Assembly: GCF_030028105.1 (NCBI RefSeq)
Contig: NC_092386.1
Span: forward strand, 24,899,721-24,963,720
Direction of reading: 5' to 3'
Source: Mobula birostris
Lineage: Eukaryota
Length of the DNA stretch: 64,000 nt
The notes under the pieces are model-generated. The model searched no databases and was not told the origin of the DNA. It saw only the letters and a list, made by a program, of their open reading frames with translations. This document shows positions 3,160 through 61,955 of the stretch, in pieces. Position numbers and translations under genes: made by a program. Each line of letters begins with the position of its first letter. The first letter of the stretch is position 1.

Positions 3160-3510
3160 CCATTCTGGCTCCCCTCTTATCTCTTCTTCTATAACTTCCC
3201 TCTGGTGCCCCTTCTCCTTCCCTTTGTCCCTCTTCTCCTGACAGGTTCCTTCTTCTTCAGCCCTTTACCTTTTCCATCTATCAGCTCCCAGCTTCTCACT
3301 TTATCCTCTCCCCCATCCACCTGCCTTCCCCCCGCACATGGTTTCACCCATTCCCTTCTAGTTTGTACCGCTTCTCCTGCCCCCACCTTCTTATTCAGTT
3401 ACATTTCCCCTTCATTTCTAGTTCTGATGAAGGGTCACGGCCCAAAATGTCGACTCTTAGTTTCTTTCCATACCATAGCTGCAGCTGAGTTCTCCCAGCA
3501 CTGTCCTCAC
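3160..3510 (+). mobile_element. Penelope-like element 3' UTR/terminal fragment
   Basis: Pyrimidine-rich tract followed by CTGATGAAGGGTCACGGCCCAAAATGTCGACT and GCTGAGTTCTCCCAGCA. Confidence 0.75.
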
Positions 3511-7077: not shown

Positions 7078-7595
7078 AACATGCTGGAGGAACTCAGCAG
7101 GTCGGGCAGCATCCATGGAAACGATCAGTCAACATTTTGGGCCGGAAGTCTTCATCAGGACTGTAGAGGGAAGGGGCAAAGGCCCTATAAAGAAGATGGG
7201 GGGAGGGTGGGAAGGAGAAGGCTGGTAGGTTCCAGGTGAAAAACCAGTAAGGGGAAAGATAAAGGGGTGGGGGAGGGGAAGCAGGGAGGGGATAGGCAGG
7301 AAAGGTGAAGAAGGAATAGGGGAAACACAATGGGTAGTAGAAGGAGGCAGAACCATGAGGGAGGTGCTAGGCAGCTGGGGGGAGGGGGCAGAGTGAAATA
7401 GGGATGGGGAAGGGAGGGGGAGGGAATTGCCGGAAGTTGGAGAATTCTATGTTCATACCAAGGGGCTGGAGACTACCTAGACGGTATATGAGGTGTTGCT
7501 CCTCCATCCTGAATTTAGCCTCATCATGGCAGTAGAGGAGGCCATGTATGGACATATCCGAATGGGAATGGGAAGCCGAATTGAAGTGGTTGGGA
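7078..7595 (-). mobile_element. Penelope-like element 3' fragment (GIY-YIG C-terminus, 3' UTR, hammerhead motif at 7126-7163)
   Basis: ORF segment HFNSASHSHSDMSIHGLLYCHDEAKFRMEEQHLIYRLGSLQPLGMNIEFSNFR; closely similar to 55305-55901. Confidence 0.88.
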
Positions 7596-7744: not shown

Positions 7745-7878
7745 ACAAGAGAAAACCTTCAGATGCTGGAAATCCAAGCAACACGCACAAAATGCTGGAG
7801 GAACTCAGCAGGCCAGGCAGCATCAATGGAAAAGAGTAAACAGTCAACATTTCAGGCCGAGACGCTTCATCAGGACTC
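7745..7878 (-). mobile_element. Penelope-like terminal fragment with hammerhead core (7841-7878)
   Basis: Reverse complement reads GAGTC CTGATGA AGCGTCTCGGCCT GAAA TGTT GACTG. Confidence 0.8.
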
Positions 7879-7890
7879 AGCCTCAAATTC

Positions 7891-14628: not shown

Positions 14629-17600
14629 ACAGTGTTGTGCAAAAGTCTTATAAAGCTAGGATGCCTAAGGTTATTACACAGTACCATGGTAATTTAGAAA
14701 CCATGGAAACCATAGAAAAACTACAGCACAGAAACAGGCCTTTTGGCCCTTCTTGGCTGTGCCGAACCATTTTCTGCTTAGTCCCACTGACCTATGCACA
14801 TGGACCATATCCCTCCATACACCTCCCATCCATGTATCCGTCCAATTTATTCTTAAATGTTAAAAAAGAACCCGCATTTACCACCTCATCTGGCAGCTCA
14901 TTCCACACTCCCACCACTCTCTGTGTGAAGAAGCCCCCCCCTAATGTTCCCTTTAAACTCCCCCCCCCTCACCCTTAACCCATGTCCTCTGGTTTTTTTC
15001 TCCCCTCGCCTCAGTGGAAAAAGCCTGCTTGCATTCACTCTATCTATACCCATCATAATTTTATATACCTCTATCAAATCCCCCCTCATTCCTCTACGCT
15101 CCAAGGAATAAAGTCCTAACCTATTCAACCTTTCTCTGTAACTGAGTTTCTCAAGTCCAGGCAACATCCTTGTAAACCTTCTCTGCATTCTTACAACCTT
15201 ATTAATATCCTTCCTGTAATTTGGTGACCAAAACTGAACACAATACTCCAGATTCGGCCTCACCAATGCCTTATATAACCTCATCATAACATTCCAGCTC
15301 TTATACTCAATACTTTGATTAATAAAGACCAATGTACCAAAAGCTCTCTTTACGACCCTATCTACCTGTGATGCCACTTTTAGGGAATTTTGTATCTGTA
15401 TTCCCAGATCCCTCTGTTCTACTGCACTCCTCAGTGCCTTACCATTTACCCTGTATGTTCTACCTTGGTTTGTCCTTCCAAAGTGCAATACCTCACACTT
15501 GTCTGTATTAAACTCCATCTGCCATTTTTCAGCCCTTTTTTCCAGCTGGTCCAAATCCCTCTGCAAGCTTTGAAAACCTTCCACACTGTCCACTACACCT
15601 CCAATCTTTGTATCATCAGAAAATTTGCTGATCCAGTTTACCACATAATCATCCAGATCATTGATATAGATGACAAATAACAATGGACCCAGCACTGATC
15701 CCTGTGACACACCACTAGTCACAGGCCTCCACTCTGAGAAGCAATCCTCTAATTCTCTGGCTTCTTCCATTGAGCTAATATCTAATTCAATTTACCACCT
15801 CTCCATGTATACCTAGCGACTGAATTTTCCTAACTAACCTCCCATGCGGGACCTTGTCAAAGGCCTTACTGAAGTCCATGTAGACAGCATCCACTGCCTT
15901 CCCTTCATCCACTTTCCTGGTAACCTCCTTGAAAAACTCCAATAAGTTGGTCAAACATGACCTACCATGCACAAAGTCATGTTGGCTCTCCCTAATAAGT
16001 CCCTGTCTATCCAAATCCTTGTAGATTCTGTCTCTTAGTACTCCCTCCAATAACTTACTCACTACCAACGTCAAACTTACAGGCCTATAATTTCCCAGAT
16101 TACTTTACAATCCTTTTTTAAACAATGGAACAACATGAGCCATTCTCCAGTCCTCTGGCACCTCACCCGTAGACACTGACATTTTAAATATATCTGCCAT
16201 GGCCCCTGCAATTTCAACACTAGTCTCCTTCAAGGTCCGAGGGAATACCCTGTCAGGTCCTGGGGATTTATCCACTTTAATTTGCCTCAAGATAGCAAGC
16301 ACCTCCTCCTTTTCAATCTGTACAGTTTCCATTATCTTACTACTTGTTTCCCTTAATTCCATAGACTTCATGCCAGTTTCCTTAGTAAATACAGATGCAA
16401 AAAACCCATTTAAGATCTCCCCCATTTCTTTAGGTTCCACACATAGTCAACCACTCTGATCTTCAAGAGGACCAATTTTATCCCTTACAATCCTTTTACT
16501 CTTAATATACCTGTAAAAGCTCTTTGGATTATCCTTCATTTTGACTGCCAAGGCAACCTCATGTCTTCTTTTAGCCCTCCTGATTTCCTTAAGTATTTTC
16601 TTGCACTTTTTATACTCCTCAAGCACCTTATTTACTCCCTGTTTCCTATACATGTCATACAACTCTCTCTTCTTCTTTATCAGAGTTGCAATATCCCTTG
16701 AAACCAAGGTTCCTTATTCCTATTCACTTTGCCTTTAATCCTGACAGGAACATACAAGCTCTGCACTCTCAGAATTTCTCATTTGAAGGTTTCCCACTTA
16801 CCGATCATATCCTTGCCCGAGAACAACCTGTCCCAATCCACGCTTTTTAGATCCTTTCTCATTTCTGCAAATTTGGCCTTCTTCCAGTTTAGATCCTCAA
16901 CCCTAGGGCCAGATCTATCTTTATCCATGATCAAGTTGAAACTATGGTGTTATGATCACTGGAACCAAAGTGCTCTAGTTGGTACCTTTATATATTGATT
17001 TAGAAAACTTTCCTGAACACATTTTACAAACTCTAACCCATCTAGACCCCCAACAGTATGGGAGTCCCAATCAATATGTGGAAAATTAAAATCCCCTACC
17101 AACACAACTTTATGTTTCCTGCGGTTGCCTGCTATCTCTCTGCAGATTTGCTCCTCCAATTCTCGCTGACTATTGGGTGGTCTATAATACAACCCCACTA
17201 ATGTGGCCATACCTTTCCTGTTTCTCAGCTCCACCCATTAGGACTCAGTAGACAAGCCCTCTAATCTGTCCTGCCTGAGCACTGCTGTAACATTTTCCCT
17301 GACAAGCAATGCTCCCACCCCCCACCTTTCATTCCTCTGCCTCTATCTCATCTGAAACATCGGAACCCTGGAATATTAGGCTGCCAGTCCTGCCCCTCCT
17401 GTAGCCAAGTTTCACTAATTGCTATAACGCCATAATTCCACGTGTCAATCCACGCCCTCAACTCGTCTGCCTTCCCTGCAATACTCCTAGCATTGAAATA
17501 TATACACCTTGTTGCATTGCACTGTGTGAGAGATGATAGACATGATTCTGATATGGGTCTCTACTGTGGACTGAGAGTGGGAAGGGGGCAGGGAGAGAAG

Positions 17601-21134: not shown

Positions 21135-21400
21135 CATCGAACATAGAACATTAGAGCTCAGTACAGGCCCTTCAGCCCATAATGTTGTGCCGACCTTATA
21201 ACCTAATCTAAGATCAACCTAGCCCCTCCCTCCCACAGAGCCCTCCATTTTTCTAGCATCCATGTGCCTATTTAGGAGTCTCTTAAATGCTCCTAATGTA
21301 TCTGCCTCTACCACCAGCCCTGGAAGAGTATTCCGCGTACCTGCCACTCTCTGTGTAAAAAATTCTTACACCTGACATCTCCCCTATACACTCCTCAGTT
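21135..21400 (-). mobile_element. CR1 3' end
   Basis: GAACATAGAACA..CAGTACAGGCCCTTCAGCCCATAATGTTGTGCCGACC. Confidence 0.8.
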
Positions 21401-21694
21401 ACCTGAAAAATATAATAATTATCTATCGGTTATTCAAGATCTTTGTAACTAATCTGTGGAAAAACTGGCTATCGCTTTGATCCTCACAATACCACAGTGC
21501 TCAGTATGAAGCCCTTCTCCTGTTTATCTCCTCAATACACTTGGCATGACCACTTAACATGACTTAGAAGGTAACAAAGGAAGTAAGTGCCCAAATTTTG
21601 TTTTTCTTTTTTAAATTTTTTTAGAAGTGTCAGATATGTGTGTTATTATGATAAACTGCCAAAGGAATAGAGAAGTTCCAAATTTTGGTGAAGG

Positions 21695-22260
21695 TCTCTG
21701 TCAGTCAGAGTTCACCATGGATATTGCATCCTAGCTGTCTAGATATGCAAGCCTGGGCAGTACGATATGGAGAGCAAGCTGTGCCCATGTAGCAAGCTCC
21801 CCCTCTTCATGCAACTGATGAATCCAAACTAACGGCAGAGACCGATACAGTTCGGTACCAGCAGCGTTGCAGGAGTTGCCAGTCAGCATTGAACTCAATG
21901 TAGGACTGCCTTAGGGATTCCAGCTCCGGACTTTTCCCTTGGAGTTTACTCCCAAAGCTTTTCCCATGGATGGATATAGCTACAAGGTAGCGGAGGCTTG
22001 AGATCTGAGTTTTCCTTCTCCTAGTTGAGTTGCCAAATATGTCAGTGGAGCCCCATTTACCTGAAGGGACTGGTTTTAAGGCACCAGTAGCCCACCTTTG
22101 CCACTTCTCCTGTCAGTAGAAATGGTTCCACCAGGCTTTGTAGCTAAGCCACATGTGAAGGCCAGGAGTTGTCAGAGATTATTTGAGGTGCACGCCATTG
22201 GGAGTATCTAATAGGTAGTGAGAGCTTGTCCCCATTACCACACCCGGCTATAACAACCTT
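21695..22260 (-). mobile_element. Non-autonomous RTE-related element (5' UTR-derived)
   Basis: Shares GCCTGGGCAG..GTATGG..GCCCATG..GCAAG.TCCCC..CCGATACAG..GGTACCAG with the SINE at 11135; no ORF. Confidence 0.6.
22107..22248 (-). ncRNA. Candidate HDV-like self-cleaving ribozyme
   Basis: Minus strand, in canonical order: P1 GCCGGG, P2 CUCCUG, P3 GCC, L3 UUCACAUGU, P3' GGC, 12-nt insert, P1' CCUGGU, GGAA, J4/2 CUGA, P2' CAGGAG. Confidence 0.55.
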
Positions 22261-22815
22261 AAATTCTGTGGGAATAAGCAAAGGTTGGTCCTTAACTTAA
22301 AGTTGCAATAGCACACACCTACTACACAATTAAGCATCTCCTATTATATAGCCAGGGACAAAGAAACTTGGCTTATAAATGACACAGACACAAAACTTTT
22401 TCAGCACACATCACCATTTGTTTTCTTGGTCTGAGGATACTGAATGGAACGTGAATCTGATGTGACAAGGCATGTAAAATGTGAAAACACTTGGGCTAAT
22501 GGTAGGTCATCAATTGCGCATTAATGCAATATACTTCCAGCATGGATTTCAAGAGACTGAACTATCCTCAATGTTAACCCAAGCTGAAAATTTCTTAGTG
22601 GTTACCATTTATTCACTCCATTGCACATTCACAACACCTTGATAGAAATGCATTCTACCCAAGATGGTAATACTTACTTTAATGAAAGAACAGCTAGAAA
22701 TATTGTAAGATCAGTCATTTAGTGCAGTAGTGCACATATTCATTTAGACAAAACCAAGCACTAGTGAATTAATTTTATAAGATAGGCTAATTGTACATTG
22801 TTGTGAGACCATAAG

Positions 22816-23104
22816 CAGACATCCCACCTCTCCCGGAACTTCCGGGAGTCTCCCGCATATGAATAGTGGCTCCCTGATGCCGGCAAATTATATACAATAT
22901 CACGGAAATCAATTTTATTGAGAGTGAGCGAGAGAAAAGCAAGAGAGAGCGACCACGAGAGAGAGCGCGCGAGAGAGAGAGCGAGAGAGAAAGCGAGAGA
23001 GAACGAGCGAGCAAGAAAGCAAGCGAGAGCGAAAGCAAGCGAGAGAGGGAGAGAGAGCGAGCGAGAGAGAAAGCAAGCGAGAGCACTTGAGAGCGCATGA
23101 GCGG

Positions 23105-23138
<34 letters not shown>

Positions 23139-23486
23139 CAGCGCGCCATGACAGAGTGTTCCAAAAAAAATATAAAACGTACGTCACCCCATACTATAAT
23201 AAAGTGTACCCCTGCCTAATAGGGGTCAAACTAATGACGGTGTTGCTCGCTGCACTGTTTGCAACAATGACTTTTCTATTACCCATGGTGGGTTAAGACT
23301 GTAAAAGACATGTTGAGGTGAGTTTAACAGGTGTCATTCGTTCATTAGCATAGCTAACGTTATTTAAACTAGCTGGCTAGCTGCTAAGGAGCTACTCTAT
23401 TGCAGACATCCCACCTCTCCCAGAAGTCTCCCACAAATTGATGGTGCTACCTCCCTGAAATGAGTTTTTGCAGGGTGGGATGTCTG
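22816..23486. mobile_element. Non-autonomous DNA transposon, 13-bp TIR, 7-bp TSD
   Basis: CAGACATCCCACC...GGTGGGATGTCTG flanked by CCATAAG on both sides. Confidence 0.88.
22920..23135. repeat. Compound (GA)n/(GAGC)n microsatellite
   Basis: Directly visible. Confidence 0.95.
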
Positions 23487-25844: not shown

Positions 25845-27125
25845 TACGCCCGAGAGCTATTAAAACATGGCTGCCCTGGCAAGTACTTGCAAATACTGAG
25901 GCTACTGCAAGAGGGTATGTCAGTCACAGTATTCAGCAATAGTGATGCTGAATCAGAACCCTTCACTGTGAAGACAGAGTTCAAACAGGGCTGTATCTTT
26001 GTGTCCACCCTATTTGCCATCTTTATTGCTGTCATCCTTCACCTCATTGGCCAAGACCTGCCACAGGGAATCCCAATCATGTCCAGAATGCTGGTTCAAG
26101 GCCAAGAACAAGGTCAGCGCCACCACTATGCTCGAGCTTCAGAGTGTGATGATAATGCCATCGCAGCACACTCTGAAGAAAGTACTGAATTCCAATGCCT
26201 CCTCAATGCCTTTGTCCAGGGATATCTGGCCCTGCGTCTTGTTTCAAATAGAAAAAAAGCACAAGTCATACATCAGCCACTGCCCAACTGCCAGCTCTCC
26301 ATAAAAGCTGATGATATCACACTTGAAAATGTCAACCACTTTCCCTACCTTAGCAGCATTCTCTCCTTTAAATCAGATATCAACTCAGTGACCAACTAAT
26401 GCCTGAGTAGTGCTGGTGAAGCCTGCGCAAGATTAAGGAAAAGAGTCTTTGAAGTCTGTGACCTACAGCTCCAAACTGAGCAGTCGTTCTTCCTATATTA
26501 CTGTATGGAAATGAATCGTGGACCATTTACAATATACACCTGAAAGCCTGGACCAATACCACCAAAGGCTTATGAAAGACTTTGAGGATCATCTGGAACG
26601 ACACACATACCAACATCAGTGTACTGGAGGAAGCCAACATGAACAACATCTCCACCCTGATAAAGCAACACCAACTCCTATAGACAGATCATGTCATCTG
26701 GATGCCTGACTCACATCTCCCAAAACAGACCCTTTACTCCCAGTTGAAGGAAGGTCAACAAGCCCCAGGTGGGCAAAGGAAACTTTTCAAAGTTAACATC
26801 AAAATCAGCCTGAAGAAATTCAACAGGACACCTAAAAACATTACACTCAGTAGATACACCTGCAGGAAATCTGTTCAAAGAGAGATCTTCGATACATAAG
26901 AGCAACCTCCACCCCGTGCTGCAGAGAACAAGGAGCAACTGCAAAAAGAGAAACTGAACCACCAGAAGACCCAGCCACTAACCACAACCACCACTTACTC
27001 TTCCCCACACTGCATCAGAATACGTGGATCCCTGATCAGCCTCTAAAGCCATCCGAGGACCTACCAATAGTCAACTCTGTAGGAGAACATCATACTCGAC
27101 TTGAGTGATTGAACTTCTACTACCT
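25845..27125 (+). mobile_element. RTE-clade LINE, 5'-truncated RT pseudogene
   Basis: ORFs GCPGKYLQILRLLQEGM..SEPFTVKTEFKQGC..TLFAIF, LENVNHFPYLSSILS, MPDSHLPKQTLYSQL. Confidence 0.88.
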
Positions 27126-28067
27126 GTATGTGTTCTTGGCTGAACAGGTCACTGACTATTCAGGTATCATGACTCACCCTATTTCCAGTTCATCTGCTAT
27201 TCAATTAATGTTGATATTTCTCTATAGTTCTCTTAGTATTCAAGTAGGTTTTTAATTTGATACTAAATTTGTCTCTTCTGTTAAACCCTTGAAGTGTATC
27301 AGTTAAATCAACTTTACATTTTCCACCTTTTGAGCTTTAAGTCTTTAAGATTCTTGAATTGTTTTTCCCCCATGTTGATGTCTAAATTAAATTGAAATAA
27401 TGTGAAAGATGAAAGTTTTTGATGCTCAACTTGGCATTCCTGTGCTACACATACCCAGTCAGCTGCCAAGTTTCAAAGCTTATTGGCATTGATCCGATTA
27501 CATCCTTTTCACTGTCACTACAAGCCAGTCCATCTTAGTTCTACTCTGGCAAGGATAAACTGAACAACAATGACATAGCTTTTATGTTAACTTATGAGAT
27601 TAAAGTCAAAGACTTTTGACTTTCAGAATCAAATAAAAGCAATAAAGAAATACTGTTATATTCTGTGGGTTTCTATAATGCATAATCCGTTGGAATTTTC
27701 ATTGGGTTTGACAATGTATATTATCGGTGAGGCTGAGTGCTCCTAACATAATTTGAATGCCATTAAGGCAGTTTTCAGGAAACTGAGAAAATATCACCGT
27801 GGAGCAATGTGGTGATCAAGTATGAGAGTAATGAAATCGGGCTTCATTACAGGGATAAAGTTATTTAAAATGTGGAAGTCAGTAAGACGTTGTGAATTAT
27901 GGAAAAAGCTGATTAAAGCTTTATATTTTTACATAAGTGGTATGTGTGTTACTGTGGAGGCCAGCATGTCTGTTGCTGACTCTCCTTGCTCTTTTGTTGA
28001 ATGTGCTCTGACGAGAACAGGGTTCCAGGATTTTGACCAATTGTCAATTTCTTTGTTTTACGATTAC

Positions 28068-28285
28068 AACGTAGAACATAGAAATCCACAGCACATTACA
28101 GGCCCTTCGGCCCACAATGTTGTGCCAACCATGTAACCTACTCTAGAAACTGCCGGGAATTTCCCTACTGTATAGCCCTCTATTTTTTCTAAGCTTCATA
28201 TACCTACCTACGAGTCTCTTAAAAGACCCTATTGTATCTGCTTCTACCACCGTCGCCAGCAGTGCATTCCACACACTCACCACTT
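28068..28285 (-). mobile_element. CR1 3' end
   Basis: GAACATAGAAATCCACAGCACATTACAGGCCCTTCGGCCCAC. Confidence 0.8.
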
Positions 28286-28404
28286 CTCACTGGATTATTA
28301 AAGAAGATGAACAAATTTTAGACTATAATTAAGATAGAATATTCTTAAGGTTTGTTTTTAAAAAACAAATAAAACATCTGAGAGTTTAATCATGTGACCT
28401 AGTT

Positions 28405-29575
28405 TTCTTGCTGCTGCCATCAGGAAGGAGGTAGCGGAGCCTTAGGCCTTGCACCACCAGGTTCAAGGACAGTTATATACCTCTCAAGCATCAGGCTCCT
28501 GAAACAGTATGGATAATTTCACTTACCTCAACACTGAAATGATTCCACAACCTATGGACTCATTTTCAAGGACTCTTCGATGTATGTTCTCAGTATTTTT
28601 TATTTAATTAGTTATTTTTGTGTATTTGCAATGTTTATCTTCGTTTGCACATTGATTGTTTGTCAGACTCTGAGTTTATTTATCATTGATTCTGTTGTAT
28701 TTCTTTGTTCTACTGTGAAAGCCTGTGAGAAAATGGATCTTAGGGTAGTATGTGGGGACATGTATGTACTTTATACTTTATTGTCGCCAAACAATTGATA
28801 CTGGAGCGTACAATCATCACAGCGATATTTGATTCTGCTCTTCGTGCTCCCTGGAGTACAAATCGATAGTAAATATTAAAAATTTAAATTATAAATCATA
28901 AATAGAAAATAGAAAAGGGAAAGTAAGGTAGGGCAAAAAAACCGAGAGGCAGGTCCGGATATTTGGAGGGTACGGCCCAGATCCGGGTCAGGATCCGTTC
29001 AGCAGTCTTATCACAGTTGGAAAGGAACTGTTCCCAAATCTGGCCGTACAAGCCTTCAAGCTCCTGAGCCTTCTCCCAGAGGGAAGAGGGACGAAAAATG
29101 TGTTGGCTGGGTGGGTCGTGTCCTTGATTATCCTGGCAGCATTGCTTCAACAGTGATAGCTGGTGTGTGTTCCTTTGACTTCCCCTCCCTGAAGTCCACA
29201 ATCCACTCCTTGATCTTACTGACGTTGAGTGTAAGGTTGTTGTCGTGACACCACTCAACCAGCTGATCTATCTTGCTCCTGTACGCCTCCTCGTCACCAT
29301 CTGAAATTCCGCCAACAGTTGTGCCATTGGCAAATTTATAGATGGCGTTTGAGCTGGCTACTCCTTCATGGGTGCAGAGAGGGTAGAGCAGTGAGTTGAG
29401 CACGCAACCTAGAGGTGCGTCACTATTGATCGTCAGTGAGAAGGAGATATTTATTTCCGATCTGCACTGAGTGGGAGTTCCTGATGAGGAAGCCAAGGAT
29501 TCAATTGCAGAGGGAGGTACAGAGGCCCAGGTTTCAGAGCGTGTTGGTTAGTACTGAGGGTGTGATGGTGTTGTA
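28405..29575. mobile_element. Cluster of Rex1/Babar-like LINE pieces (28405-28770 +, 28770-29150 -, 29150-29575 -)
   Basis: ORF APLGCVLNSLLYPLCTHE..YKFANGTTVGGISDGDEEAYR..WCHDNNLTLNVSK; shared 3' UTRs. Confidence 0.8.
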
Positions 29576-30537
29576 ATAAATAAACAATAAATCAATAAAT
29601 CTTCTGGGAAAGAAGTACATCCTCTGCTGAACCTTTTTGTTAATAAAGGAGATATAATACCACATATATTGGTGGTGTAAAGCTAAGGGACTAGATATGA
29701 AAAGTATTAGTTTCTTGGTTTAGTCTAGAAGTGGAATAAGGCGGATGATGCACCTACATTATGTTTTGTTGCAGTACACAGACATGGAAATCTGGAACAC
29801 ATTCCTATGAGAGCTGCAAGTTTACAGCAGTTCTCTATGGAATCACAAGCCATCAGTCAGTGTCACTCACCCAAGTTACCTGGGGAGATCTTGAAGTGCT
29901 GGCCTGCTTTGACTTGCTCCAAAGCTATCAGAATTAAGCAGTCTGCTTCATGACTTACTGAAGAAAGTTGCTTTGGATTGTCACTGTGAATTGAAGAAAA
30001 GGATATCAATCATTTACCAATATTAAAGTTGAGAAAGATCATTAAGGATCATCAGTTGTGTGTCTTAACTGAAGGAGGTATGCTAATATATTGTACAAAC
30101 AGGTCAGCTTGAGTGACTGCAACAGATGAAAACCTGAATTTGTTAGTGATAATTATCAAAGATTCAGTTCCCACAGGGGACAAAGCATCACACCGATGTC
30201 TCTATGATTCAACTTGAAAGGTGAATCTTGCATTCGCAATAGATTAATCTTGAAAGAAGATTGATTATTTTTGCCACTTCAAGTGAGAGTTGAGGTGAAG
30301 TATAATGCTCATTTAGGTCATTTCCAAATTTGGAGAAGTGAAAACGATTTCCTGTCTTCTGATGAACAGGCCAGAGACATGTCAAAGTTTTTCTGGTAGT
30401 GTTTCTGTGAAATACCTTAATATATAGTGCTATGTATAAGACAGTTATTTTTACACAATGATCCCTTCAAGGGCTGACAAACTGTTTTTAATATAGTTTT
30501 TAATGACTTTTTCTCACTTTCCATGGAATATTTATTG

Positions 30538-30812
30538 TTGTCATAGAGTCATAGAACACTCCAGCACAGAACAGGCTCTTCGGCCCATTTAGTCTGTGCT
30601 GAACTATTATTCTGCCTAATCCTATTGACTTGCACCCAGACCACAGCCCTCCCCATCCATGTACCTATCCAAATTTCACTTAATTGTTGAAATTGAACCC
30701 CTATTCATCACTTGCACTGGCAGCTCGCTCCACACTCTCATCACCCTCTGAGTGAAGAAGCTCCCCCTCATGTTCACCTTAAACATTTCACCTTTCACCC
30801 TTAACCCATGAC
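30538..30812 (-). mobile_element. CR1 3' end
   Basis: GTCATAGAGTCATAGAACACTCCAGCACAG..CCTTTCACCCTTAACCCATG. Confidence 0.8.
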
Positions 30813-32101
30813 TATTTTTACTATTACAGTCCCTGAGGTTGAGATGTTTAATGGAAACGTGACAATTTCTCAGGCCTTAGGGAGGCCTCTGATGACCTTG
30901 CGCTGATCATGATTTCCAATGTGCTTGACTGCTTACTGGCCTTGGATATGGTTTAGTAAGTCACATGATACAAGGGCAGTGATGGATTGGCAATAAAGGG
31001 TAACCTTGCAAATATGTGAGCTGATAAGGAAGACTTTTACAATAAATAACTTCGTGAGGTTGTACGAGTGAAAGGAGGTGAATTGTCTCTCGAGAATAAT
31101 TTTGTTTTGTGGATTTTTTTTTATTTGTTGAGTACATAAGCACACGATTTCCTTTAGCTGCTGGTCATGCAGTTGCATTTTCCTTCAGTGCCCAGCCACT
31201 CATTCATTATTTCATTTGGAAGCTGATGGGTTGCAACAGTTAACCAGCTAAGGCAAACTTCAGGTTGCTGACAATTCCCTTCACAGCAGCTTGTAGTTGA
31301 TTAGTTTTCAGCATGTGAGTTGTTTCTGTTTGTGAGTAAAAGCCTTACATGGACAATGCAAAGGACTTCTCAAATGACCAGTCAACCATCCTTTACACTG
31401 GATAAGAGCCCAGGGCAAGCAGCTCACGTGACAACGCCAAGAGAAAATCTTGGGTATCTAGAGTTGATCAGCAGAATAAGATGATTGGAAATTGGTCACT
31501 AATTGTGTACTAGTTAATTGGGAAACCACCCACCGACAGGACACAGCTGCAGGAACCCAGCAAACATGACACTCATCCAGAAGACTGCATTGTACATTTA
31601 TACCTTTATTTTGATTCACTTCTTCATTTTGTTCCTTGCTGCCTTTCAAACTCAGATTCCGATTCATTTATTTATCATGGGAACATCGAAACCAAAGGGG
31701 ACAACTTCACTCAATTTCACTTGCCTCATCGTTGAAATGTTCTCACATTCAATGGACTCACTTTCAAGGACTCCATCTCATGTTCGCGATATTAATTGCC
31801 TATTTATTTATTATACCAAAATCAACAACAACAAAGCAAGCCCTTCCTCCCTCCCATCCACCCCCACACATGGACAGTCCTCCAACACCAGGTCAGGCTT
31901 CCACTCTCGATCCTTCAGCCTTTGGCTTCTGGACTTCCGATCAACCTTTGGGCTTTGATCTTCAGAATTGTCCTCAGGGCTAGCCCATCGCAGGACCCTG
32001 AATTCTGGGCTTGCTGACTCACCGGCTCTTGTGCCTCCTGTTTGCATTGCCACCTGATCCTGGAATCCGCTGACCCGGGACAGACAATGCGACAAACCAC
32101 G

Positions 32102-33503: not shown

Positions 33504-33735
33504 GAGTCCCGATGAAGGGTCTCGGCCCCAAACGTCGACTGTCTACTCTTTTCCACAGATATACTCACAACACGCTGGAGGAGCTCAGCAAGTCGGACAG
33601 CATCTGTGGAAACGATGAGTTGACGTTTTGGGCCGGAACTCTTCATCAGGACTGATGAGTCGATGTTTCGGGCCGGAACCCTTCTGCCTAGATGCTGCCT
33701 GGCCTGCTGAGCTCCTCCAGCATTTTGTGTGTGTT
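33504..33735. mobile_element. Two Penelope-like terminal fragments nested in opposite orientation
   Basis: Outer + copy 33504-33560 plus 33689-33735; inner - copy 33561-33684. Confidence 0.8.
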
Positions 33736-34269: not shown

Positions 34270-36222
34270 GAAACAGGGGGTAAATCAGGTGCTTGAGGAG
34301 TATAAGAAGTGCAAGAAAATACTTAAGAAAGAAATCAGGAGGGCAAAAAGAAGACATGAGGTTGCCTTGGCAGTCAAAGTGAAGGATAATCCAAAGAGCA
34401 TTTACAAGTATATTAAGAGCAAAAGGATTGTAAGGGATAAAATTGGTCCTCTTGAAGATCAGAGTGGTCGGCTTTGTGCGGAACCAAAGGAAATGGGGGA
34501 GATCTTAAATAGGTTTTTTGCGTCTGTATTTACTAAGGAAGCTGGCATGAAATCTATGGAATTGAGGGAATCAAGTAGTGAGACCATGGAAACTGTACAG
34601 ATTGAAAAGGAGGAGGTCCTTGCTGTCTTGAGGAAAATTAAAGTGGATAAATCCCTGGGACCTGACAGAGTGTTCCCTTGGACCTTGAAGGAGACTAGTG
34701 TTGAAATTGCGGGAGCCCTGGCAGAAATATTTAAAATGTCGCTGTCTACGGGTGAAGTGCCGGAGGATTGGAGAGTGGCTCATGTTGTTCCGTTGTTTAA
34801 AAAAGGATCGAAAAGTAATCCGGGAAATTATAGGCCGGTGAGTTTAACGTCAGTAGTAGGTAAATTATTGGAGGGAGTACTAAGAGACAGAATCTACAAG
34901 CATTTGGATAGACAGGGGCTTATTAGGAAAAGTCAACATGGCTTTGTGCGTGGTAGGTCATGTTTGACCAATCTGTTGGAGTTTTTCGAGGAGGTTACCA
35001 GGAAAGTGGATGAAGGGAAGGCAGTGGATATTGTCTACATGGACTTCAGTAAGGCCTTTGACAAGGTCCCGCATGGAAGGTTAGTTAGGAAAATTCAGTC
35101 GCTAGGTATACATGGAGAGGTGGTAAATTGGATTAGACATTGGCTCGATGGAAGAAGCCAGAGAGTGGTGGTAGAAAATTGCTTCTCTGAGTGGAGGCCT
35201 GTGACTAGTGGTGTGCCACAGGGATCAGTGCTGGGTCCATTGTTATTTGTCATCTATATCAATGATCTGGATGATAATGTGGTAAATTGGATCAGCAAGT
35301 TTGCTGATGATACAAAGATTAGAGGTGTAGTAGACAGTGAGGAAGGTTTTCAGAGCCTGCAGAGGGACTTGGACCAGCTGGAAAAAAGGGCTGAAAAATG
35401 GCAGATGGAGTTTAATACTGACAAGTGTGAAGTATTGCACGTTGGAAGGACAAACCAACGTAGAACATACAGGGTTAATGGTAAGGCACTGAGGAGTGCA
35501 GTGGAACAGAGGGATCTGGGAATACAGATACAAAATTCCCTAAAAGTGTCATCACAGGTAGATAGGGTCGTAAAGAGAGCTTTTGGTACATTGGCCTTTA
35601 TTAATCAAAGTATTGAGTATAAGAGCCGGAATGTTATGATGGGGTTGTATAAGGCATTGGTGAGGCCGAATCTGGAGTATTGTGTTCAGTTTTGGTCACC
35701 AAATTACAGGAAGGATATAAATAAGGTTGAAAGAGTGCAGAGAGGGTTTACAAGGATGCTGCTGGGACTTGAGAAACTCAGTTACAGAGAAAGGTTGAAT
35801 AGGTTAGGACTTTATTCCCTGGAGCGTAGAAGAATGAGGGGAGATTTGATAGAGGTATATAAAATTATGATGGGTATAGATAGAGTGAATGCAAGCAGGC
35901 TTTTTCCACTGAGGCTAGGGGAGAAAAAAACCAGAGGACATGGGTTAAGTGTGAGGGGGGAAAAGTTTAAAGGGAACATTAGGGGTGGCTTCTTCACACA
36001 GAGAGTGGTGGGAGTATGGAATGAGCTGCCAGACGAGATGGTAAATGCGGGTTCCTTTTTAACATTTAAGAATAAATTGGACAGATACATGGATGGGAGG
36101 TGTATGGAGGGATATGGTCCGTGTGCAGGTCAGTGGGACTAGGCAGAAAATGGTTCGGCATAGCCAAGAAGGGCCAAAGGGCCTGTTTCTGTGCTGTAGT
36201 TTCTGTGGTTCTATGGTTCTAT
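34270..36222 (+). mobile_element. Young 5'-truncated CR1 LINE
   Basis: Uninterrupted RT frame, 3' tail TTTCTGTGGTTCTATGGTTCT; near-identical to 14695-16645 inverted. Confidence 0.97.
34289..36142 (+). CDS. CR1 ORF2 reverse transcriptase frame (617 aa, lacks APE, begins at GTG; probably not expressed)
   Basis: NYRPVSLTS, YMDFSKAFDKVPH, GVPQGSVLGPLLF, KFADDTK, DLGI motifs. Confidence 0.8.
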   Translation: MLEEYKKCKKILKKEIRRAKRRHEVALAVKVKDNPKSIYKYIKSKRIVRDKIGPLEDQSGRLCAEPKEMGEILNRFFASVFTKEAGMKSMELRESSSETMETVQIEKEEVLAVLRKIKVDKSLGPDRVFPWTLKETSVEIAGALAEIFKMSLSTGEVPEDWRVAHVVPLFKKGSKSNPGNYRPVSLTSVVGKLLEGVLRDRIYKHLDRQGLIRKSQHGFVRGRSCLTNLLEFFEEVTRKVDEGKAVDIVYMDFSKAFDKVPHGRLVRKIQSLGIHGEVVNWIRHWLDGRSQRVVVENCFSEWRPVTSGVPQGSVLGPLLFVIYINDLDDNVVNWISKFADDTKIRGVVDSEEGFQSLQRDLDQLEKRAEKWQMEFNTDKCEVLHVGRTNQRRTYRVNGKALRSAVEQRDLGIQIQNSLKVSSQVDRVVKRAFGTLAFINQSIEYKSRNVMMGLYKALVRPNLEYCVQFWSPNYRKDINKVERVQRGFTRMLLGLEKLSYRERLNRLGLYSLERRRMRGDLIEVYKIMMGIDRVNASRLFPLRLGEKKTRGHGLSVRGEKFKGNIRGGFFTQRVVGVWNELPDEMVNAGSFLTFKNKLDRYMDGRCMEGYGPCAGQWD

Positions 36223-36964: not shown

Positions 36965-37590
36965 TTAAACAAAAACAGGCAAACTGCTGCAGGAGCTCGG
37001 CAGACCCTTGTAGTACCTATGGAGAGAAATAAAGTCAATGTTTTGGGCTGAGATCCTTCATCAGGACTGGAAAGGAAGTGAGAAGGAGCCAGTGCAGTAA
37101 GGTAGGGAGAGAGGAAAGAGTACAGCCTGGCAGATAAGGGGCGAAGCCAGGTGAGGAGGAAGGCGAGTGGCTAGGGGAGGGGTTTGAAGTGGGAAGCTGG
37201 GAGGGGAGAAGTGGCAAAGGTAAAGGGCTGAAGAAGAGGGAGTTTGATAGGAAGGGACAGTGGACCATGGTAGAAAGGAAAGGAGGAGGAGTAGCTGATG
37301 AGGTGACAGACAAGTGAGAAGAAGAGGAGGGGTAAGAGGAGAGTCCGCATGGGAATGGAAAAAGAGAGAAGGGGGGGTAGAAATTACTGTAAGTTAGAGA
37401 AATTAATGTTGGGGGCTACTCAGATGGAAGAGGAGATGTTGCTCCTCCAAACTGAGTGCCTCATCATGGCAGAAGAGGCCATGGACCGACATGTTGGAAT
37501 GGGAATGGGAATGGGAATAGAATTCAAATGGGTGGTCACCGGGAAATACCACTTACTGTGGCGGGCAGAGCGAAACTTCTCAACGAAGCA
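36965..37590 (-). mobile_element. Penelope-like element 3' fragment
   Basis: ORF YFPVTTHLNSIPIP; purine-rich UTR; degenerate hammerhead at 37033-37069. Confidence 0.8.
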
Positions 37591-40342: not shown

Positions 40343-41204
40343 AAAAGTTCTATTCAAAAGGTTCAAAGGAAATCTAAACAAGCCTGATGTATGTTTGAAA
40401 CAAGTCCTGTGGACTGATGAAGTTAAAATAGAACTTTTTGGCCGCAACGAGCAAAGGTATGTTTGGAGAAAAAAGGGTGCAGAATTTCATGAAAAGAACT
40501 CCTCTCCAACTGTTAAGCATGGGGTGGATCGATCATGCTTTGGGCTTGTGTTGCAGCCTGTGGCATGGGGAACATTTACTGGTAGAGGGAAGAATGAATT
40601 CAATTAAATACCAGCAAATTCTGGAAGCAAACATCCAACCTTCTGTAAAAAAGCTGAAAATGAAGATGGAAAGAGGATGGCTTCTACAACACGATAATGA
40701 TCCTAAACACACCTCAAAATCTACAATGCACTACCTCAAGAGGCGCAAGCTGAAGGTTTTGCCATGGCCCTCACAGTCCCCTGACCTAAACATCATTGAA
40801 AATCTGTGGATAGACCTCAAAAGAACAGTGCATGCAAGACGACCCAAGAACCTCACAGAACTAGAAGCCTCTTGCAAGGAAGAATGGGTGAAAATCCCCC
40901 AAACAAGAATTGCAAGACTCTTAGCTGGCTACAGAAAGCGTTTATAAGCTGTGATACTTGCCAAAGGGGGTGTTACTAAGTACCGACCATGCAGGGTGCC
41001 CAAACTTTTGCTTCGGCCCCTTTTCCTTTTTTGTTATTTTGAAACTGTAAAAGATGGAAATAAAAAGGTTTTCTTGCTTAAAATATTAAAGAAACGTGTC
41101 TTCTTTAACTTTATGCCTTTTGGAAATCAGTTCATCTTTTATTTGCTTAGCTATTCACAGTAAAAAATTTTGACCAGGGGTGCCCTAACTTTTGCATGCC
41201 ACTG
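40343..41204 (+). mobile_element. Tc1 (DD34E) transposon, right half with IR/DR-type right end
   Basis: LWTDE..IELFG, QHDNDPKH, SPDLNIIENLW (34 residues between D and E); GGGTGCCC.AACTTTTGC repeated at ~40994 and ~41178; ends CCACTG|TA. Confidence 0.93.
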
Positions 41205-45309: not shown

Positions 45310-45720
45310 AATTTCTCTAACTTCTGGTAATTTCTCCACCCTTCCCCCTTCTCTCTTTTTTCCATTCCCCATTCTGGATCCTCTCTTATCCCTTCTCCTC
45401 ACCTGCCCAATGACACCTTCTGGCGCCCCTCTTCCTTCCCTTTTTCCCACAGTCCACTCTCCTCTCCTGTCAGATTCCTTCTTTAGCCTTTTACCTCTTC
45501 AACCTATCATCACCAGCTTCTCACTCCACCCTCCCACTTTCCTTCTCACCTGGTTTCACCTGTCACCTGCCAGCTAGTACTTCTTCCCCTCCCACTCACC
45601 TTCTTGTTCTGGCTTCTGCCTCCTTTGTTTTGAGCCTTGATGAAAGGATTCTGCCTGAAACGTCAACCATTTACTCCCCTCCAGAGATGCTGCCTGACCT
45701 GCTGAGTTCCTCCAGTGTCT
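45310..45720 (+). mobile_element. Penelope-like 3' fragment with decayed hammerhead
   Basis: Pyrimidine-rich UTR, TTGATGAAAGG..CCTGAAACGTC, GATGCTGCCTGACCTGCTGAGTTCCTCCAG. Confidence 0.78.
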
Positions 45721-47231: not shown

Positions 47232-50200
47232 GTGCTATGCATTGTAGCTCCATAAACTAATTGAAAGAAAAACCTATGAGCCAGGAATATTCATGGACTT
47301 AATTTTTCTTTAGTGAGGCCAGTATACTACATAGTATATATACTAAATAGATATTCACAGCATAGTAAATTTTAAGTTGTCTCATTCAGGCCTAAAAATT
47401 TAGTTGCATGGAGGATTTCTTACTCTTGTGGGACAAGGGGGATCACTCTGCTTGGCAGGTGAGACTTGTGGCTGTGGAACAATCTCAGGCTCTGGGGCTT
47501 CCTCTGTGGTGGTTGCAATAGTTAACTCTGGGACTGCAGGAGGTAGTTCTGACAGGTCTGGACACCTTTCTTCTCTTAGAAATGACTCTGCTCTCCTTAA
47601 CTGATCGATGTGTTGTCTCCACTGTGAGGAGAGTGGTTCCAATTCTGTCCTTAATCTTTCCAAATACCCACTTTTGATCACTTCTGCAGTTGCTCTCCAA
47701 GGCTGTTTGTCCAGGATTGAAAAGTCGAACGAATGTCCCTGACTGAGGAGCCCTCAGTTTGTCCCAGCTGATTGTCCCGCATACCCCTCTGACATTGTGA
47801 TTTAGGAGGTCCAAATGTGAGTGCAGGGGGTGACCCAGGAACAGCATAACTGGTGAGTTGTTAGTTTTGGGGTGTGCTGCATTGCCATATGCAAGGAGGA
47901 AATTGGTAAGCTTTTGATTCAGTTTTAGTGTAGAGTGTTCAGCTGATGTTCTTTGAAATACATTTTTTAGACTCTGGACAAATCTTTCCATCAAACCATT
48001 TGTAGCTGGGTGGTATGTTGCAGATGTAATATGTCTTATTCTGTTCATTTTCAAAAATGACTGAAACTGTTCCACAACCTGCTGTGGTCCATTGTCACTG
48101 ACTAAGTGTTCTGGAACACCAGTCCTTGAGAAGAGGCTTCTCAAAACATGGACAGTGTGCAAGGCTGTAGTGGAGTCTGCTAGGAACATTTCAGGCCATT
48201 TTGTAGGTGCATCAACTATTACCAAGGAATTTGTGCCCATGAATATTCCAGCAAAATCCAATGAATCCTCTGCCAGAGCAATGCAGACCATTCTCAGGGA
48301 TAGAGAGTCGCTGCTCTTGACATCTTTTCGACGTGATGACATCTCGAACCGTACATGGTGAGCTGCTCGATCAGCTGATATATCCCGGGCCACCAGAGAA
48401 AGTTTCGCGCCAATGCTTTCATTTTGACCACGCCTAGATGACCGGCGTGTAGGTCCTCCAACACCTTAGCTCTCAGCTTGGATGGTACAACACCTCTCAA
48501 TCCCTGCGTAAGGCAACACCCCTGTTAACGGCAAGTTCATCCCTGCGCTGGTAAAAAATGGTGGGACTGGAGCTTCTGCTGCACACTTCAGCCAGTTTGG
48601 GTTGCCATGTAGGTTTAAGACAGTGTGGGGTCTTTTCTGGGTTTCCTTTGGATCATCTCTACCATAATAGGGAGACTTTTGATTTGCATTAGGGAGAATA
48701 CTTCAACAGGAGTGTCCTCCTTTGTAAATTTTTCAGGTATTTCATTTTCTAAGGGTAAACGGGACAATCACCTGCATTTCCATGATTAGTTGTCCTCTTG
48801 AATTTGATCTTGTGATTGTGTCCTCCAAGATAAAGAGCCCATCTCTGCACTTGTGCATCTGCTGTTGAGGAGCTCTCTTCTGTGGATTGAAAATGGACTC
48901 TTGTTGCTGATGGTCAGTAATAAGGATAAAGTCTCTTCCACACAGGTACTGATTGAAACATTTTACACCCTAAACCAGACTCAAGGCCTCTCTGTCAACC
49001 TGTGCATAACTTTTCTCTGCAGCAGTAAGGGAACATGATGTAAAAGTATGTGGCGTTCACTTCCATCACTCATATGTGACATGAATGCACTATACCATAA
49101 GGCGAGATGTCACTGGACAATGTGGATCATAACATGTAAGTGCAATGTCTGATGTCACCATTTCCTTTGCCTTTTGGAAAGCTATCTCACACTGATTTGT
49201 CCATTGCCGTTTCTTTCTGACCTGTAGTAATCTGTTCAAGGCGTGGAGCTCAGTAGCTAGGTTTGGCAGGAACCTTTTATAATAATTGGCAGTCCTAAAA
49301 AGGACCACAGCCGTGACATGTCTGTTGGCCTTGGGTTATCCACCACTGCTCGAATTTTCTTATCAGACTTGTGTAATACTTGTGCGCCAATGTTGTGACC
49401 ACAGTAAGTGATGCATGGATTTCAAGAATTCACACTTGTAGTGTTGTGCTCTGAGCCCATAATCTTCTAATCTTTTTAACACTGTCTTGAGATGTTGGGG
49501 ATGTTCTTTGTTACACTTACCAGTAACTATCATGTCATCCAGGTAAAACTGAATGCCTGGGGAACCTTGCAGCACCTAGTCGATAACTTTCTGCCAGAGT
49601 GCTGGAGCAGATGCTACTCCCAAAATAAGCCTATTATAGCGATAAAGCGATTTCTGAGCATTTATGGTGAGAAACACTTTGGATTCTTCTTCCATCTCCA
49701 ACTGTAGGTAGTCCTCAGCTAAGTCTGCTTTGTCAAAGTGTTTTCCTCCTGAGCGGTTTGCAAAGATATCATCTATCCTGGGCAATGGGTATTAATCTAC
49801 TTTCAGTACTGTGTTGGTGGTAACCTTAAAATCATCAGAGATCCTGACAGACTCATCCTTATTGGCTACTGGGATCACTGGTGTTGTCCATGGTCTCCAG
49901 ACAACCCTGGAAAGAATTCCCTCAGCTTCCTTACGATCTAGCACACTGAATTCTTCATCATGGATGGTATATAGAACTGCTCAGGCTTTGTAAAACTTGG
50001 GTGTGGCATTTTCATTTAATATTATTTTATCTTTGCTATATTTGAGTTGTCCAATGCCATTCTTGAACATTGCTGTGGCATCATTCAGTACCTTTCTTAG
50101 TTCACTTTCAGTTGACTCTATTGCAGGAGATGTGACCTACAAATGATGGATGGATCTCCAATCAATTTGCAGTGGTCTCAGCCAATGTTGGGCCTCCTGT

Positions 50201-55304: not shown

Positions 55305-55901
55305 GAAACATCGTGAAACCTGACGCAGATTGGGGGACCACTTCGTCGAGCACCTCCACTCTGTCCGCCACAACAGACAGGATCTCCTGGTAGCCAGCCA
55401 TTGCAACTCTGCTTCCCATTCCCATTCAGATATGTCCATACATGGCCTCCTTTACTGCCATGATGAGGCTAAACTCAGGTTGGAGGGGCAACACCTCATA
55501 TACCGTCTAGGTAGTCTCCAACCCCTTGAAGTGAACATAGAATTCTCCAACTTCCGATAATTTCCTCCCCTCCCTTCCTCTATCCCTATTTCACTCTGCC
55601 CCCTTCCCCAGCTGCCTATCACCTCCCTTATGGTTCCGCCTCCTTCTTCTACTACCCATTGTTTCCCTGCATATGATATCCCTGCTTCCCCTCCCCCACC
55701 CCTTTGCCTTTCAAATTACTGGTTTTTCAACTGAACCTACAAGCATTCTTCAAATCGTTCCCCCTCCTTCTTTCTTCAGTCCTGACGAAGGGTTCCGGCC
55801 CGAAATGTCGACTCATCATTTCCACTGATGCTGCCCGACCTGCTGAGTTCCTCCAGTGTGCTGTGAGTGTTGCTTTGATCCCAGCATCTGCAGATTATTT
55901 T
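55305..55901 (+). mobile_element. Penelope-like element 3' fragment (GIY-YIG remnant, UTR, hammerhead)
   Basis: ET*RRLGDHFVEH..HLIYRLGSLQPLEVNIEFSNFR; flanked by diverged direct repeats GCATTCTAACTGGT/GTATTCCAACTGAT. Confidence 0.9.
55777..55814 (+). ncRNA. Minimal type-I hammerhead ribozyme motif
   Basis: AGTC-CTGACGA-A-GGG(TTCCGG)CCC-GAAA-TG-TC|GACT: complete core, stem I, stem II, GUC site. Confidence 0.75.
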
Positions 55902-61821: not shown

Positions 61822-61955
61822 TAAGTCCAGCTGAAGGGTCTTGGCCCAAAAGGTTGGCTCTGTATTTCTCTCCATAGCTGCTGCCTGGCCTGCTGTCTCC
61901 AGCATTTTGAGGGTGTTGCTCTGGATTTCCAGCATCTGCAGAATCTCTTGTGTGT
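61822..61955 (+). mobile_element. Penelope-like terminal fragment
   Basis: CTGAAGGGTCTTGGCCCAAAA..GCTGCCTGGCCTGCTG..TTCCAGCATCTGCAG. Confidence 0.7.

What the first reader, a model, noticed from the sequence alone, without database searches (positions are those of the whole stretch)
22107..22248. HDV-like ribozyme fold at the 5' end of a non-autonomous RTE-related element, with an atypical insert
Seen on the minus strand, all elements in nested double-pseudoknot order: P1 GCCGGG (22248-22243) / CCUGGU (22135-22130) with a G1-U wobble; P2 CUCCUG (22168-22163) / CAGGAG (22112-22107); P3 GCC/GGC around L3 UUCACAUGU; GGA able to pair with UUC (P1.1); J4/2 CUGA with a putative catalytic C at 22116. 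Atypical: 12 nt (UUAGCUACAAAG) between P3' and P1', a 9-nt L3, a long J1/2 and a vestigial P4. Known: RTE and R2 LINEs use HDV-like ribozymes to process their 5' ends. Inference: a variant architecture carried by an ORF-less element.
Basis: partly seen in the sequence, partly recalled or inferred. Interest (0 to 1): 0.82.

Follow-up and report, generated by a model that had tools for sequence, protein, structure and literature searches.

The report
Truncated copy of ribozyme-headed retroposon

Summary
As a set they are no more than chance gives. A descriptor loose enough to accept them finds 15 sites in the window, against a mean of 13.8 in 12 shuffles. Rfam finds no HDV-like match.

Laying contigs of four runs shows a family with tens of thousands of contigs covering about 21690-22262. 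Family homology does not stop at G22248. It runs on to 22262. There, 356-453 contigs per run continue with six or seven shared letters (GGUUCC on the element strand) before unrelated A/T-rich flank. The window copy lacks those letters.

GGUUCC is the exact complement of GGAACC (22129-22124), which follows GGU (22132-22130) directly. This gives a canonical order. P1 is the lost hexamer with 22129-22124. P3 is GCC/GGU.

Earlier notes of this scan describe the same family on other pieces of this genome. No covariation test was possible, and cleavage is untested.

The parts
21685..22262 (-). This copy of the repeat family, about 578 nt. Its 5' end is at 22262. The 3' end is approximate.
   Evidence: Summed contig depth is 1e4-1e5 inside 21704-22262 and about 11-40 outside. 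Loose ends with low agreement mark both ends: 0.46 at 22262, about 0.52 at 21704. The window diverges and has a small deletion in the last ~20 nt (my reading of the loose-end letters).
22263..22268 (-). Where the family's 5'-terminal hexamer (GGUUCC, the P1 5' strand) would lie. The window has unrelated letters here, so this copy lacks P1.
   Evidence: table 7: 412, 375, 453 and 356 contigs (X1, X2, X5, X9) continue beyond 22262 with + strand GGAACCA, then A/T-rich letters of low agreement; the window reads CAGAAU on the minus strand.
22169..22262 (-). J1/2, 94 nt here. A possible closing helix pairs 22256-22248 with 22177-22169.
   Evidence: Position follows from the refined fold. The closing helix is read. 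Its fold energy is not better than shuffles (z -0.33). Many copies carry 10 more nt just before P2 (loose ends at 22168).
22163..22168 (-). P2 5' strand, CUCCUG.
   Evidence: No majority difference in the family among the rows shown.
22160..22162 (-). P3 5' strand, GCC.
22133..22159 (-). L3, 27 nt, with an internal hairpin GUGGC-UUA-GCUAC (22152-22140).
   Evidence: hairpin -5.7 kcal/mol, z -1.06, 32 of 200 shuffles fold as well, which is weak. L3 = 27 is the only solution for this anchor.
22130..22132 (-). P3 3' strand, GGU. It pairs with GCC, including one G-U pair.
22124..22129 (-). P1 3' strand, GGAACC. It is the exact complement of the family's 5'-terminal hexamer and occurs only once in the element.
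   Evidence: single occurrence, at element position 134..
22117..22123 (-). Seven nt in the place of J1/4 and P4. No P4 helix is possible.
   Evidence: P4-less R2 ribozymes are described in PMC3774820, section 16.
22113..22116 (-). J4/2, CUGA, with the candidate catalytic C at 22116.
   Evidence: a C four nt before P2'.
22107..22112 (-). P2 3' strand, CAGGAG.

Best explanation
The stretch is the head of one old copy of a short, non-coding retroposon family that is extremely abundant in this ray genome and its relatives. The copy has lost its first 6-7 bases. In full-length members the first roughly 160-170 nt can fold as an HDV-like nested double pseudoknot. Its parts are:
- P1: the element's first six nt (GGUUCC) with GGAACC (22129-22124 here).
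- J1/2: a long domain of 94-104 nt.
- P2: CUCCUG with CAGGAG.
- P3: GCC with GGU.
- L3: enlarged to 27 nt, carrying a 5-bp hairpin.
- P4: absent.
- J4/2: CUGA, with the catalytic C (22116 here).

Inferred mechanism, as for R2 and RTE elements: the element is read through from upstream transcription, and the ribozyme cuts just 5' of P1. This makes the exact 5' end that is then copied into new insertions.

This copy has unrelated letters where the P1 5' strand should be, so it cannot cut at the family site.

Shown: the family boundaries, the terminal hexamer and its complement, and the order and adjacency of the helices. Inferred: the fold itself, catalysis, and the link to RTE.
For::
- 26,082-31,924 contigs per run lie on 21690-22262 at 80% likeness or more.
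- At 22262, 356-453 contigs per run continue with GGAACCA (+ strand) and then low-agreement A/T-rich letters (agreement 0.46, against 0.70-0.75 at internal break points). Family homology therefore ends 6-7 nt beyond the window copy's end, 20 nt upstream of G22248.
- Among the 40 of 104 difference rows shown, none falls in P2, P3, P1', J4/2 or the L3 hairpin stems. Only 22139 and 22154, both in single-stranded L3, differ.

- The complement GGAACC occurs once in the element.
- It is directly preceded by a P3' whose partner directly follows the P2 5' strand, and a C lies four nt before the P2 3' strand.
- Only 42 of 5000 dinucleotide shuffles of the element give any such arrangement.

Papers:
- PMC3774820 (sections 12, 16, 18 read): P1' lies immediately after L3/P3; P1 is 6-7 bp; P2 is 5 bp or more; P4 may be too short to fold; P1 and P1' lie 23 to over 700 nt apart; RTE ribozymes cut at the element's 5' end.
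- PMC4908430 (abstract and Results read): the cleavage site is the first nt of P1, and large J1/2 domains occur.

Earlier notes of this scan describe the same architecture, including a hairpin in L3, on other copies. These are leads, not evidence.
Against: - No family copies could be fetched, so there is no covariation test. The helices are merely unchanged in the rows shown.
- No Rfam HDV-like model matches.
- No convincing P1.1: the two nt after P1' are A and U, and the canonical L3 partners do not pair with them.
- The L3 hairpin and the J1/2 fold are not more stable than shuffles.
- The first P1 pair would be G-C, not the G-U wobble that I recall as usual for this family.
- A 27-nt L3 is not described in the two papers I read.
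- Across the whole window the refined descriptor is at chance level: 2 sites against 1.34 per shuffle. Only the link to the element's own terminus makes it notable.
- The exact 5' terminus is uncertain by up to 3 nt, because the flank is A/T-rich.
Confidence: 0.6

Rival explanations
1. There is no ribozyme at all. The family's sharp 5' end comes from a defined transcription start or from the retrotransposition machinery, and all the HDV-like pairings, refined ones included, are chance matches of short helices.
For: Short helices of this kind are common. No Rfam match. The folds are not more stable than shuffles. P1.1 is unclear. No covariation data exist.
Against: The hexamer that ends the family is exactly complementary to the six nt at the one place where P1' must lie. 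Only 42 of 5000 element shuffles give this. No tRNA-like head that would suggest an internal promoter. HDV-like heads are known in RTE and R2 elements (PMC3774820; PMC6765202, passages read).
Confidence: 0.2
2. The family head is an HDV-like ribozyme, but with helices other than those drawn here. It might have another P3/L3 register, a 7-bp P1 starting one nt earlier, or a P1.1 next to the L3 hairpin.
For: P1.1 could not be placed. The 5' terminus is uncertain by 1-3 nt.
Against: With P1' fixed at 22129-22124, the scan over L3 6-40 nt and a 6-bp P2 gave a single solution.
Confidence: 0.14
3. One reading: a variant HDV-like ribozyme that cuts 5' of G22248 and has 12 nt between P3' and P1'.
For: The pairings exist. 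The P1' strand ends in U followed by GG, which resembles the HDV arrangement as I recall it. GCCGGG and CCUGGU show no majority difference among the rows shown.
Against: Family copies keep about 20 conserved nt upstream of 22248. Cutting there would remove those nt from every new copy. P1' is not adjacent to P3', a defining feature (PMC3774820, section 18). The set of pairings is at chance level. GCCGGG pairs at least as well with CCUGGC 22166-22161.
Confidence: 0.04

Closest known systems
HDV-like ribozymes at the 5' ends of non-LTR retrotransposons (R2, RTE, R4, L1Tc, Baggins). Sources: Eickbush 2013, PMC3774820; review PMC6765202, passages read; Ruminski 2011 cited there but not held in the library.
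   Same: The position at the very 5' end of the element. The order P1-J1/2-P2-P3-L3-P3'-P1'-J4/2-P2'. A 6-bp P1, a 6-bp P2 and a 3-bp P3. A C four nt before P2'. P4 can be missing, as in some R2 ribozymes.
   Different: L3 would be 27 nt with an internal hairpin. P1.1 is not evident. The first P1 pair is G-C. No Rfam model matches. This copy lacks the P1 5' strand.
Large HDV-like ribozymes with a structured J1/2 (P1.2) domain, such as Agam-2-1 (PMC4908430).
   Same: A long J1/2 (94-104 nt) whose two ends can pair: 22256-22248 with 22177-22169.
   Different: P2 is 6 bp, not the extended 12 bp. The J1/2 fold here is not more stable than shuffles.
The same family as noted earlier in this scan on other pieces of this genome (s1-145255, s1-145449, s1-145706, s1-895651 and others).
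   Same: A non-coding element of roughly 560-580 nt, an HDV-like head of about 150-190 nt, and a hairpin in L3.
   Different: This copy is cut short by 6-7 nt at its 5' end and lacks 10 nt before P2, which led to a different drawing. Sequence identity with those copies could not be checked, because the look-up by sequence was blank.

Membership tests
HDV-like self-cleaving ribozyme | Nested double-pseudoknot order with a 6-7 bp P1 whose first nt is the cleavage site. | tested here: not met
   In this copy the P1 5' strand is absent; 22263-22268 are unrelated letters. At family level it is met on paper: the terminal GGUUCC read from loose ends pairs with 22129-22124.
HDV-like self-cleaving ribozyme | P1' immediately downstream of P3'/L3. 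| tested here: met
Met for the refined fold: GGU 22132-22130 is followed directly by GGAACC 22129-22124. The rule is from PMC3774820, section 18.
HDV-like self-cleaving ribozyme | P2 of 5 bp or more, flanking a 3-bp P3, with a C in J4/2 just before P2'. | tested here: met
   CUCCUG/CAGGAG, GCC/GGU, and C22116 + UGA + P2'.
HDV-like self-cleaving ribozyme | L3 of about 7-8 nt with a conserved U...G reverse wobble, and a P1.1 of 1-2 bp to the nt after P1'. | tested here: inconclusive
   L3 is 27 nt. It begins with U22159 and has G22136 near its 3' end. No canonical P1.1 partner exists for A22123 and U22122. The usual L3 length is recalled; the G/U pair is from PMC3774820, section 12.
HDV-like self-cleaving ribozyme | Match to a curated covariance model (Rfam HDV-like families). 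| tested here: not met
   0 matches at gathering score. No HDV-like family at E up to 10 on 1301 nt or on 186 nt.
HDV-like self-cleaving ribozyme | Compensatory changes in the helices among relatives. | not testable with these tools
   No copies could be fetched. There is one copy in the window.
HDV-like self-cleaving ribozyme | Site-specific self-cleavage. | not testable with these tools
   This needs a bench experiment. No run on record as RNA holds the stretch.
RTE-clade LINE or its deletion derivative | Homology to the RTE endonuclease/reverse transcriptase ORF or to an RTE 3' end. | tested here: inconclusive
   No Pfam domain in 4 open stretches. phmmer of the 59-aa stretch gave 10 weak hits, none above 47 bits. 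Seven of the ten were scanned against Pfam and none showed an RT or endonuclease domain. Two are translations of related repeats. The family's 3' end is followed by A/T-rich simple sequence. 'RTE' rests on earlier notes.

The most novel reading that the evidence does not exclude
Full-length members of this ray family carry an active HDV-like ribozyme of an undescribed build. Its catalytic loop L3 is enlarged to about 27 nt by an inserted hairpin. It has no P4, and it has a roughly 100-nt J1/2 domain. This would show that the HDV active site tolerates a helix inside L3.
Probability: 0.35. Interest if true: 0.6.

Novelty: new member of a known kind. Interest (0 to 1): 0.25.

Why it matters
For this locus it matters little. 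It is a dead, shortened copy of a family this scan has already met many times, and HDV-like heads on RTE-type elements are known.

The useful result is a correction. The 'insert between P3' and P1'' is not a new architecture. At family level the open point is the hairpin inside L3. If such ribozymes cleave, that would widen the known limits of the HDV catalytic core and of the descriptors used to search for it.

Tried and rejected
- A second copy in the window: none found. BLAST of 21300-22799 against the window gave only the self-hit and two hits of an unrelated repeat at 21300-21413.
- Family copies from public collections: two metagenome scans, one bacterial/archaeal genome scan and one viral scan were all blank.
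- Family copies through proteins: the search for homologous proteins with the 101-aa open stretch was blank. It only sees proteins of 0.55-1.75 times the query length. phmmer of the 59-aa stretch gave 10 weak hits. Two of them, P0002 and P0007, translate related repeats: 47% and 41% identity over 62 and 61 aa.
- tRNA-derived SINE head: rejected, 0 tRNA genes.
- The match of the refined descriptor at 34064 (+): read and taken as chance, since 1.34 sites are expected per window.
- The weak Rfam similarity to ST7-OT3_4 (E 0.16-0.5, 15-16 bits against a gathering score of 80): not significant and not pursued.
- Look-up of earlier notes by sequence: blank, which means nothing according to the operators.
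- Three papers were not held: Webb & Luptak 2011, Ruminski 2011 and Webb 2009. Whether an L3 hairpin is already in print was therefore not settled. My two searches listed nothing with one, judged from titles and abstracts only. Supplementary files were not opened.
- I did not fold a family consensus, because that would need typing a changed sequence.

Full report
**1.
On the minus strand every stated pairing is present.
- GCCGGG 22248-22243 pairs with CCUGGU 22135-22130. This needs two G-U pairs, not one.
- CUCCUG 22168-22163 pairs with CAGGAG 22112-22107.
- GCC 22162-22160 pairs with GGC 22150-22148, around a 9-nt loop.
- CUGA lies at 22116-22113.
- Twelve nt (22147-22136) lie between the drawn P3' and P1'.
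- Only about 10 nt sit where P4 should be.

**2. Is that more than chance?** It is not.
- I wrote a descriptor just loose enough to accept the drawing: P1 6 bp starting with G and up to 2 G-U; J1/2 up to 120 nt; P2 6 bp; P3 3 bp; L3 7-9 nt; insert 0-12 nt; 3-60 nt to a C; three nt; then P2'.
- Twelve dinucleotide-preserving shuffles of the window give 5-21 sites, mean 13.8.
- With the insert limited to 0-1 nt there are 4 sites against a mean of 3.25.
- The minimum-energy fold of 22100-22250 has z = -0.20, and 75 of 200 shuffles fold at least as well.
- Rfam 15 gives nothing at gathering score in the whole window. No HDV-like family appears at E up to 10 on 1301 nt or on 186 nt.

**3. What the surroundings are.**
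- The window holds a single copy.
- Earlier notes of this scan say the genome is a ray's. They describe, on other pieces of it, a non-coding element of about 560 nt with an HDV-like head and 'a hairpin in L3'. I used these notes as a lead only.
- I laid Logan contigs of four DNA runs on 21500-22500 at 80% likeness. The runs were X1 and X2 (one organism, one sample), X5 and X9 (two other organisms). Between 26,082 and 31,924 contigs per run were laid.
- Summed depth is about 11-40 outside the element. It is 1e4 to 1e5 and more between about 21704 and 22262.
- So this is a very abundant interspersed family, shared by at least three organisms.
- Single-copy contigs of X5 (21500-21721 and 22229-22500) and of X9 (22244-22500) cross the junctions with 2-6 differences. 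The insertion itself is therefore shared and old.

**4. Where the family begins.**
- The best-supported loose ends at the upstream side are at 22262, not at 22248. There are 412, 375, 453 and 356 contigs in the four runs.
- Their unaligned continuation reads GGAACCA on the + strand, then A/T-rich letters.
- Mean agreement there is 0.46. At internal break points (21782, 21937, 22168), where homologous sequence simply continues, it is 0.70-0.75.
- I read this as follows. Other copies go on for six nt, GGUUCC on the element strand, possibly one to three more. Then unrelated flank begins.
- The window has CAGAAU at those places.
- The copy is therefore cut short, or rearranged, by 6-7 nt at its 5' end.
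One caveat: contigs do not show molecule ends, and 3084 further loose ends were not listed.

**5. The fold that fits the family's end.**
- GGUUCC is the exact complement of GGAACC at 22129-22124. That is the only GGAACC in the element.
- This stretch is directly preceded by GGU 22132-22130, which pairs with GCC 22162-22160.
- GCC 22162-22160 directly follows CUCCUG 22168-22163.
- Seven nt after GGAACC come C22116-UGA and then CAGGAG 22112-22107.
- The result is the canonical nested order, with P1' immediately after P3'. The R2 work states that requirement (PMC3774820, section 18).
- The helix lengths fall within the stated ranges: P1 6-7 bp, P2 5 bp or more, P4 sometimes too short to fold, and P1 and P1' separated by 23 to over 700 nt (PMC3774820, sections 16 and 18).
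It holds a hairpin GUGGC-UUA-GCUAC (22152-22140).
- With P1' fixed as GGAACC, I scanned L3 6-40 nt, a 6-bp P2 and a 3-bp P3 with at most one G-U each, and a C four nt before P2'. This is the only solution at this anchor.
- 42 of 5000 shuffles of the element give any solution. In the whole window the descriptor is at chance level: 2 sites, against 1.34 per shuffle in 100 shuffles. The second site, at 34064, was read and looks like chance.
- The weight of the argument therefore rests on one coincidence. The element's own terminal hexamer is the P1 partner of the one place where P1' must lie.

**6. Conservation.**
- 40 of 104 difference rows were shown. None of them falls in P2, P3, P1', J4/2 or the hairpin stems.
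- In the core, the window copy differs from the majority only at 22139 (about 94% of depth) and 22154 (57% in X1). Both lie in single-stranded L3.
- Loose ends at 22168 (274-381 contigs per run, agreement 0.73-0.75) show that many copies carry ten more nt between ...GACAA and P2. The window copy has a 10-nt gap in J1/2.
- With those letters, the two ends of J1/2 could pair over 8 bp, one mismatch and 2 bp. In the window they pair over 6 bp, one mismatch and 2 bp (22256-22248 with 22177-22169).
- This recalls the structured J1/2 domains that activate large HDV-like ribozymes (PMC4908430, abstract and Results). It is my reading of the letters, and it is not supported by energy (z -0.33, 69 of 200 shuffles fold as well).

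**7. What speaks against the refined fold.**
- P1.1 is not evident.
- The L3 hairpin is weak: -5.7 kcal/mol, z -1.06, and 32 of 200 shuffles fold as well.
- The first P1 pair would be G-C.
- A 27-nt L3 is not in the two papers I read.
- No covariance model matches.
- Cleavage is untested, and no run on record as RNA holds the stretch.

**8. The element.**
- Its open stretches have no Pfam domain.
- phmmer of the 59-aa stretch 21910-21734 against 1.84 billion representatives gave 10 hits at E up to 0.001, and none at 1e-10.
- Two short hits, P0002 and P0007, are translations of related repeats: 47% and 41% identity over 21967-21782.
- Of the other eight hits, I scanned five against Pfam. They are low-complexity or unrelated proteins.
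- There is no tRNA-like head.
- The family's 3' end runs into A/T-rich simple sequence (loose ends at 21704).
- I could not test 'RTE' myself. HDV-like ribozymes at RTE 5' ends are in print (PMC3774820, Discussion; PMC6765202, section 11).

**9. Verdict.**
- It is wrong on the feature that made it interesting. The 'insert' is part of an enlarged L3.
- The true P1 strand is missing from this copy, so the copy is a dead relic.
- The family-level oddity, a hairpin inside L3, remains an untested candidate variant. This scan has already noted it on other DNA of the same genome.

Noticed in passing
window 3420-3464, 33505-33549, 45633-45677, 55778-55822, 61824-61868 (and the inverse family at 7127-7169, 7842-7884, 33618-33660, 37033-37075): A repeat family whose copies carry a CUGAUGA...GAAAC core like a minimal hammerhead ribozyme, as in Penelope-like elements. 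That comparison is from my recall. Rfam gave no hammerhead at gathering score.
   Followed up: no
window 34289-36142 (+) and 14795-16590 (-): A LINE fragment with a 617-aa open frame carrying a reverse-transcriptase domain (RVT_1, E 1.7e-35). There is a 92-95% identical inverted copy (I1/I2). It shows no DNA similarity to the element studied here.
   Followed up: partly
window 22095-22151 (-): A weak, non-significant Rfam similarity of the ribozyme core to ST7-OT3 conserved region 4: 15-16 bits against a gathering score of 80, E 0.16-0.5. Probably chance. Not pursued.
   Followed up: no
window 22263 onward, in other copies (loose ends at 22262): The flank upstream of the family's 5' end is strikingly A-rich on the + strand, which is T-rich on the element strand, in all four runs. 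A target-site preference or an artefact of the consensus; unexplained.
   Followed up: no
window 22922-23146: A GA-rich, degenerate microsatellite-like array about 700 nt from the element (D1).
   Followed up: no
window 47485-48393 (-) and 40438-40947 (+): Open frames with an integrase core domain (rve) and a DDE_3 transposase domain: remains of an LTR element and of a DNA transposon.
   Followed up: no
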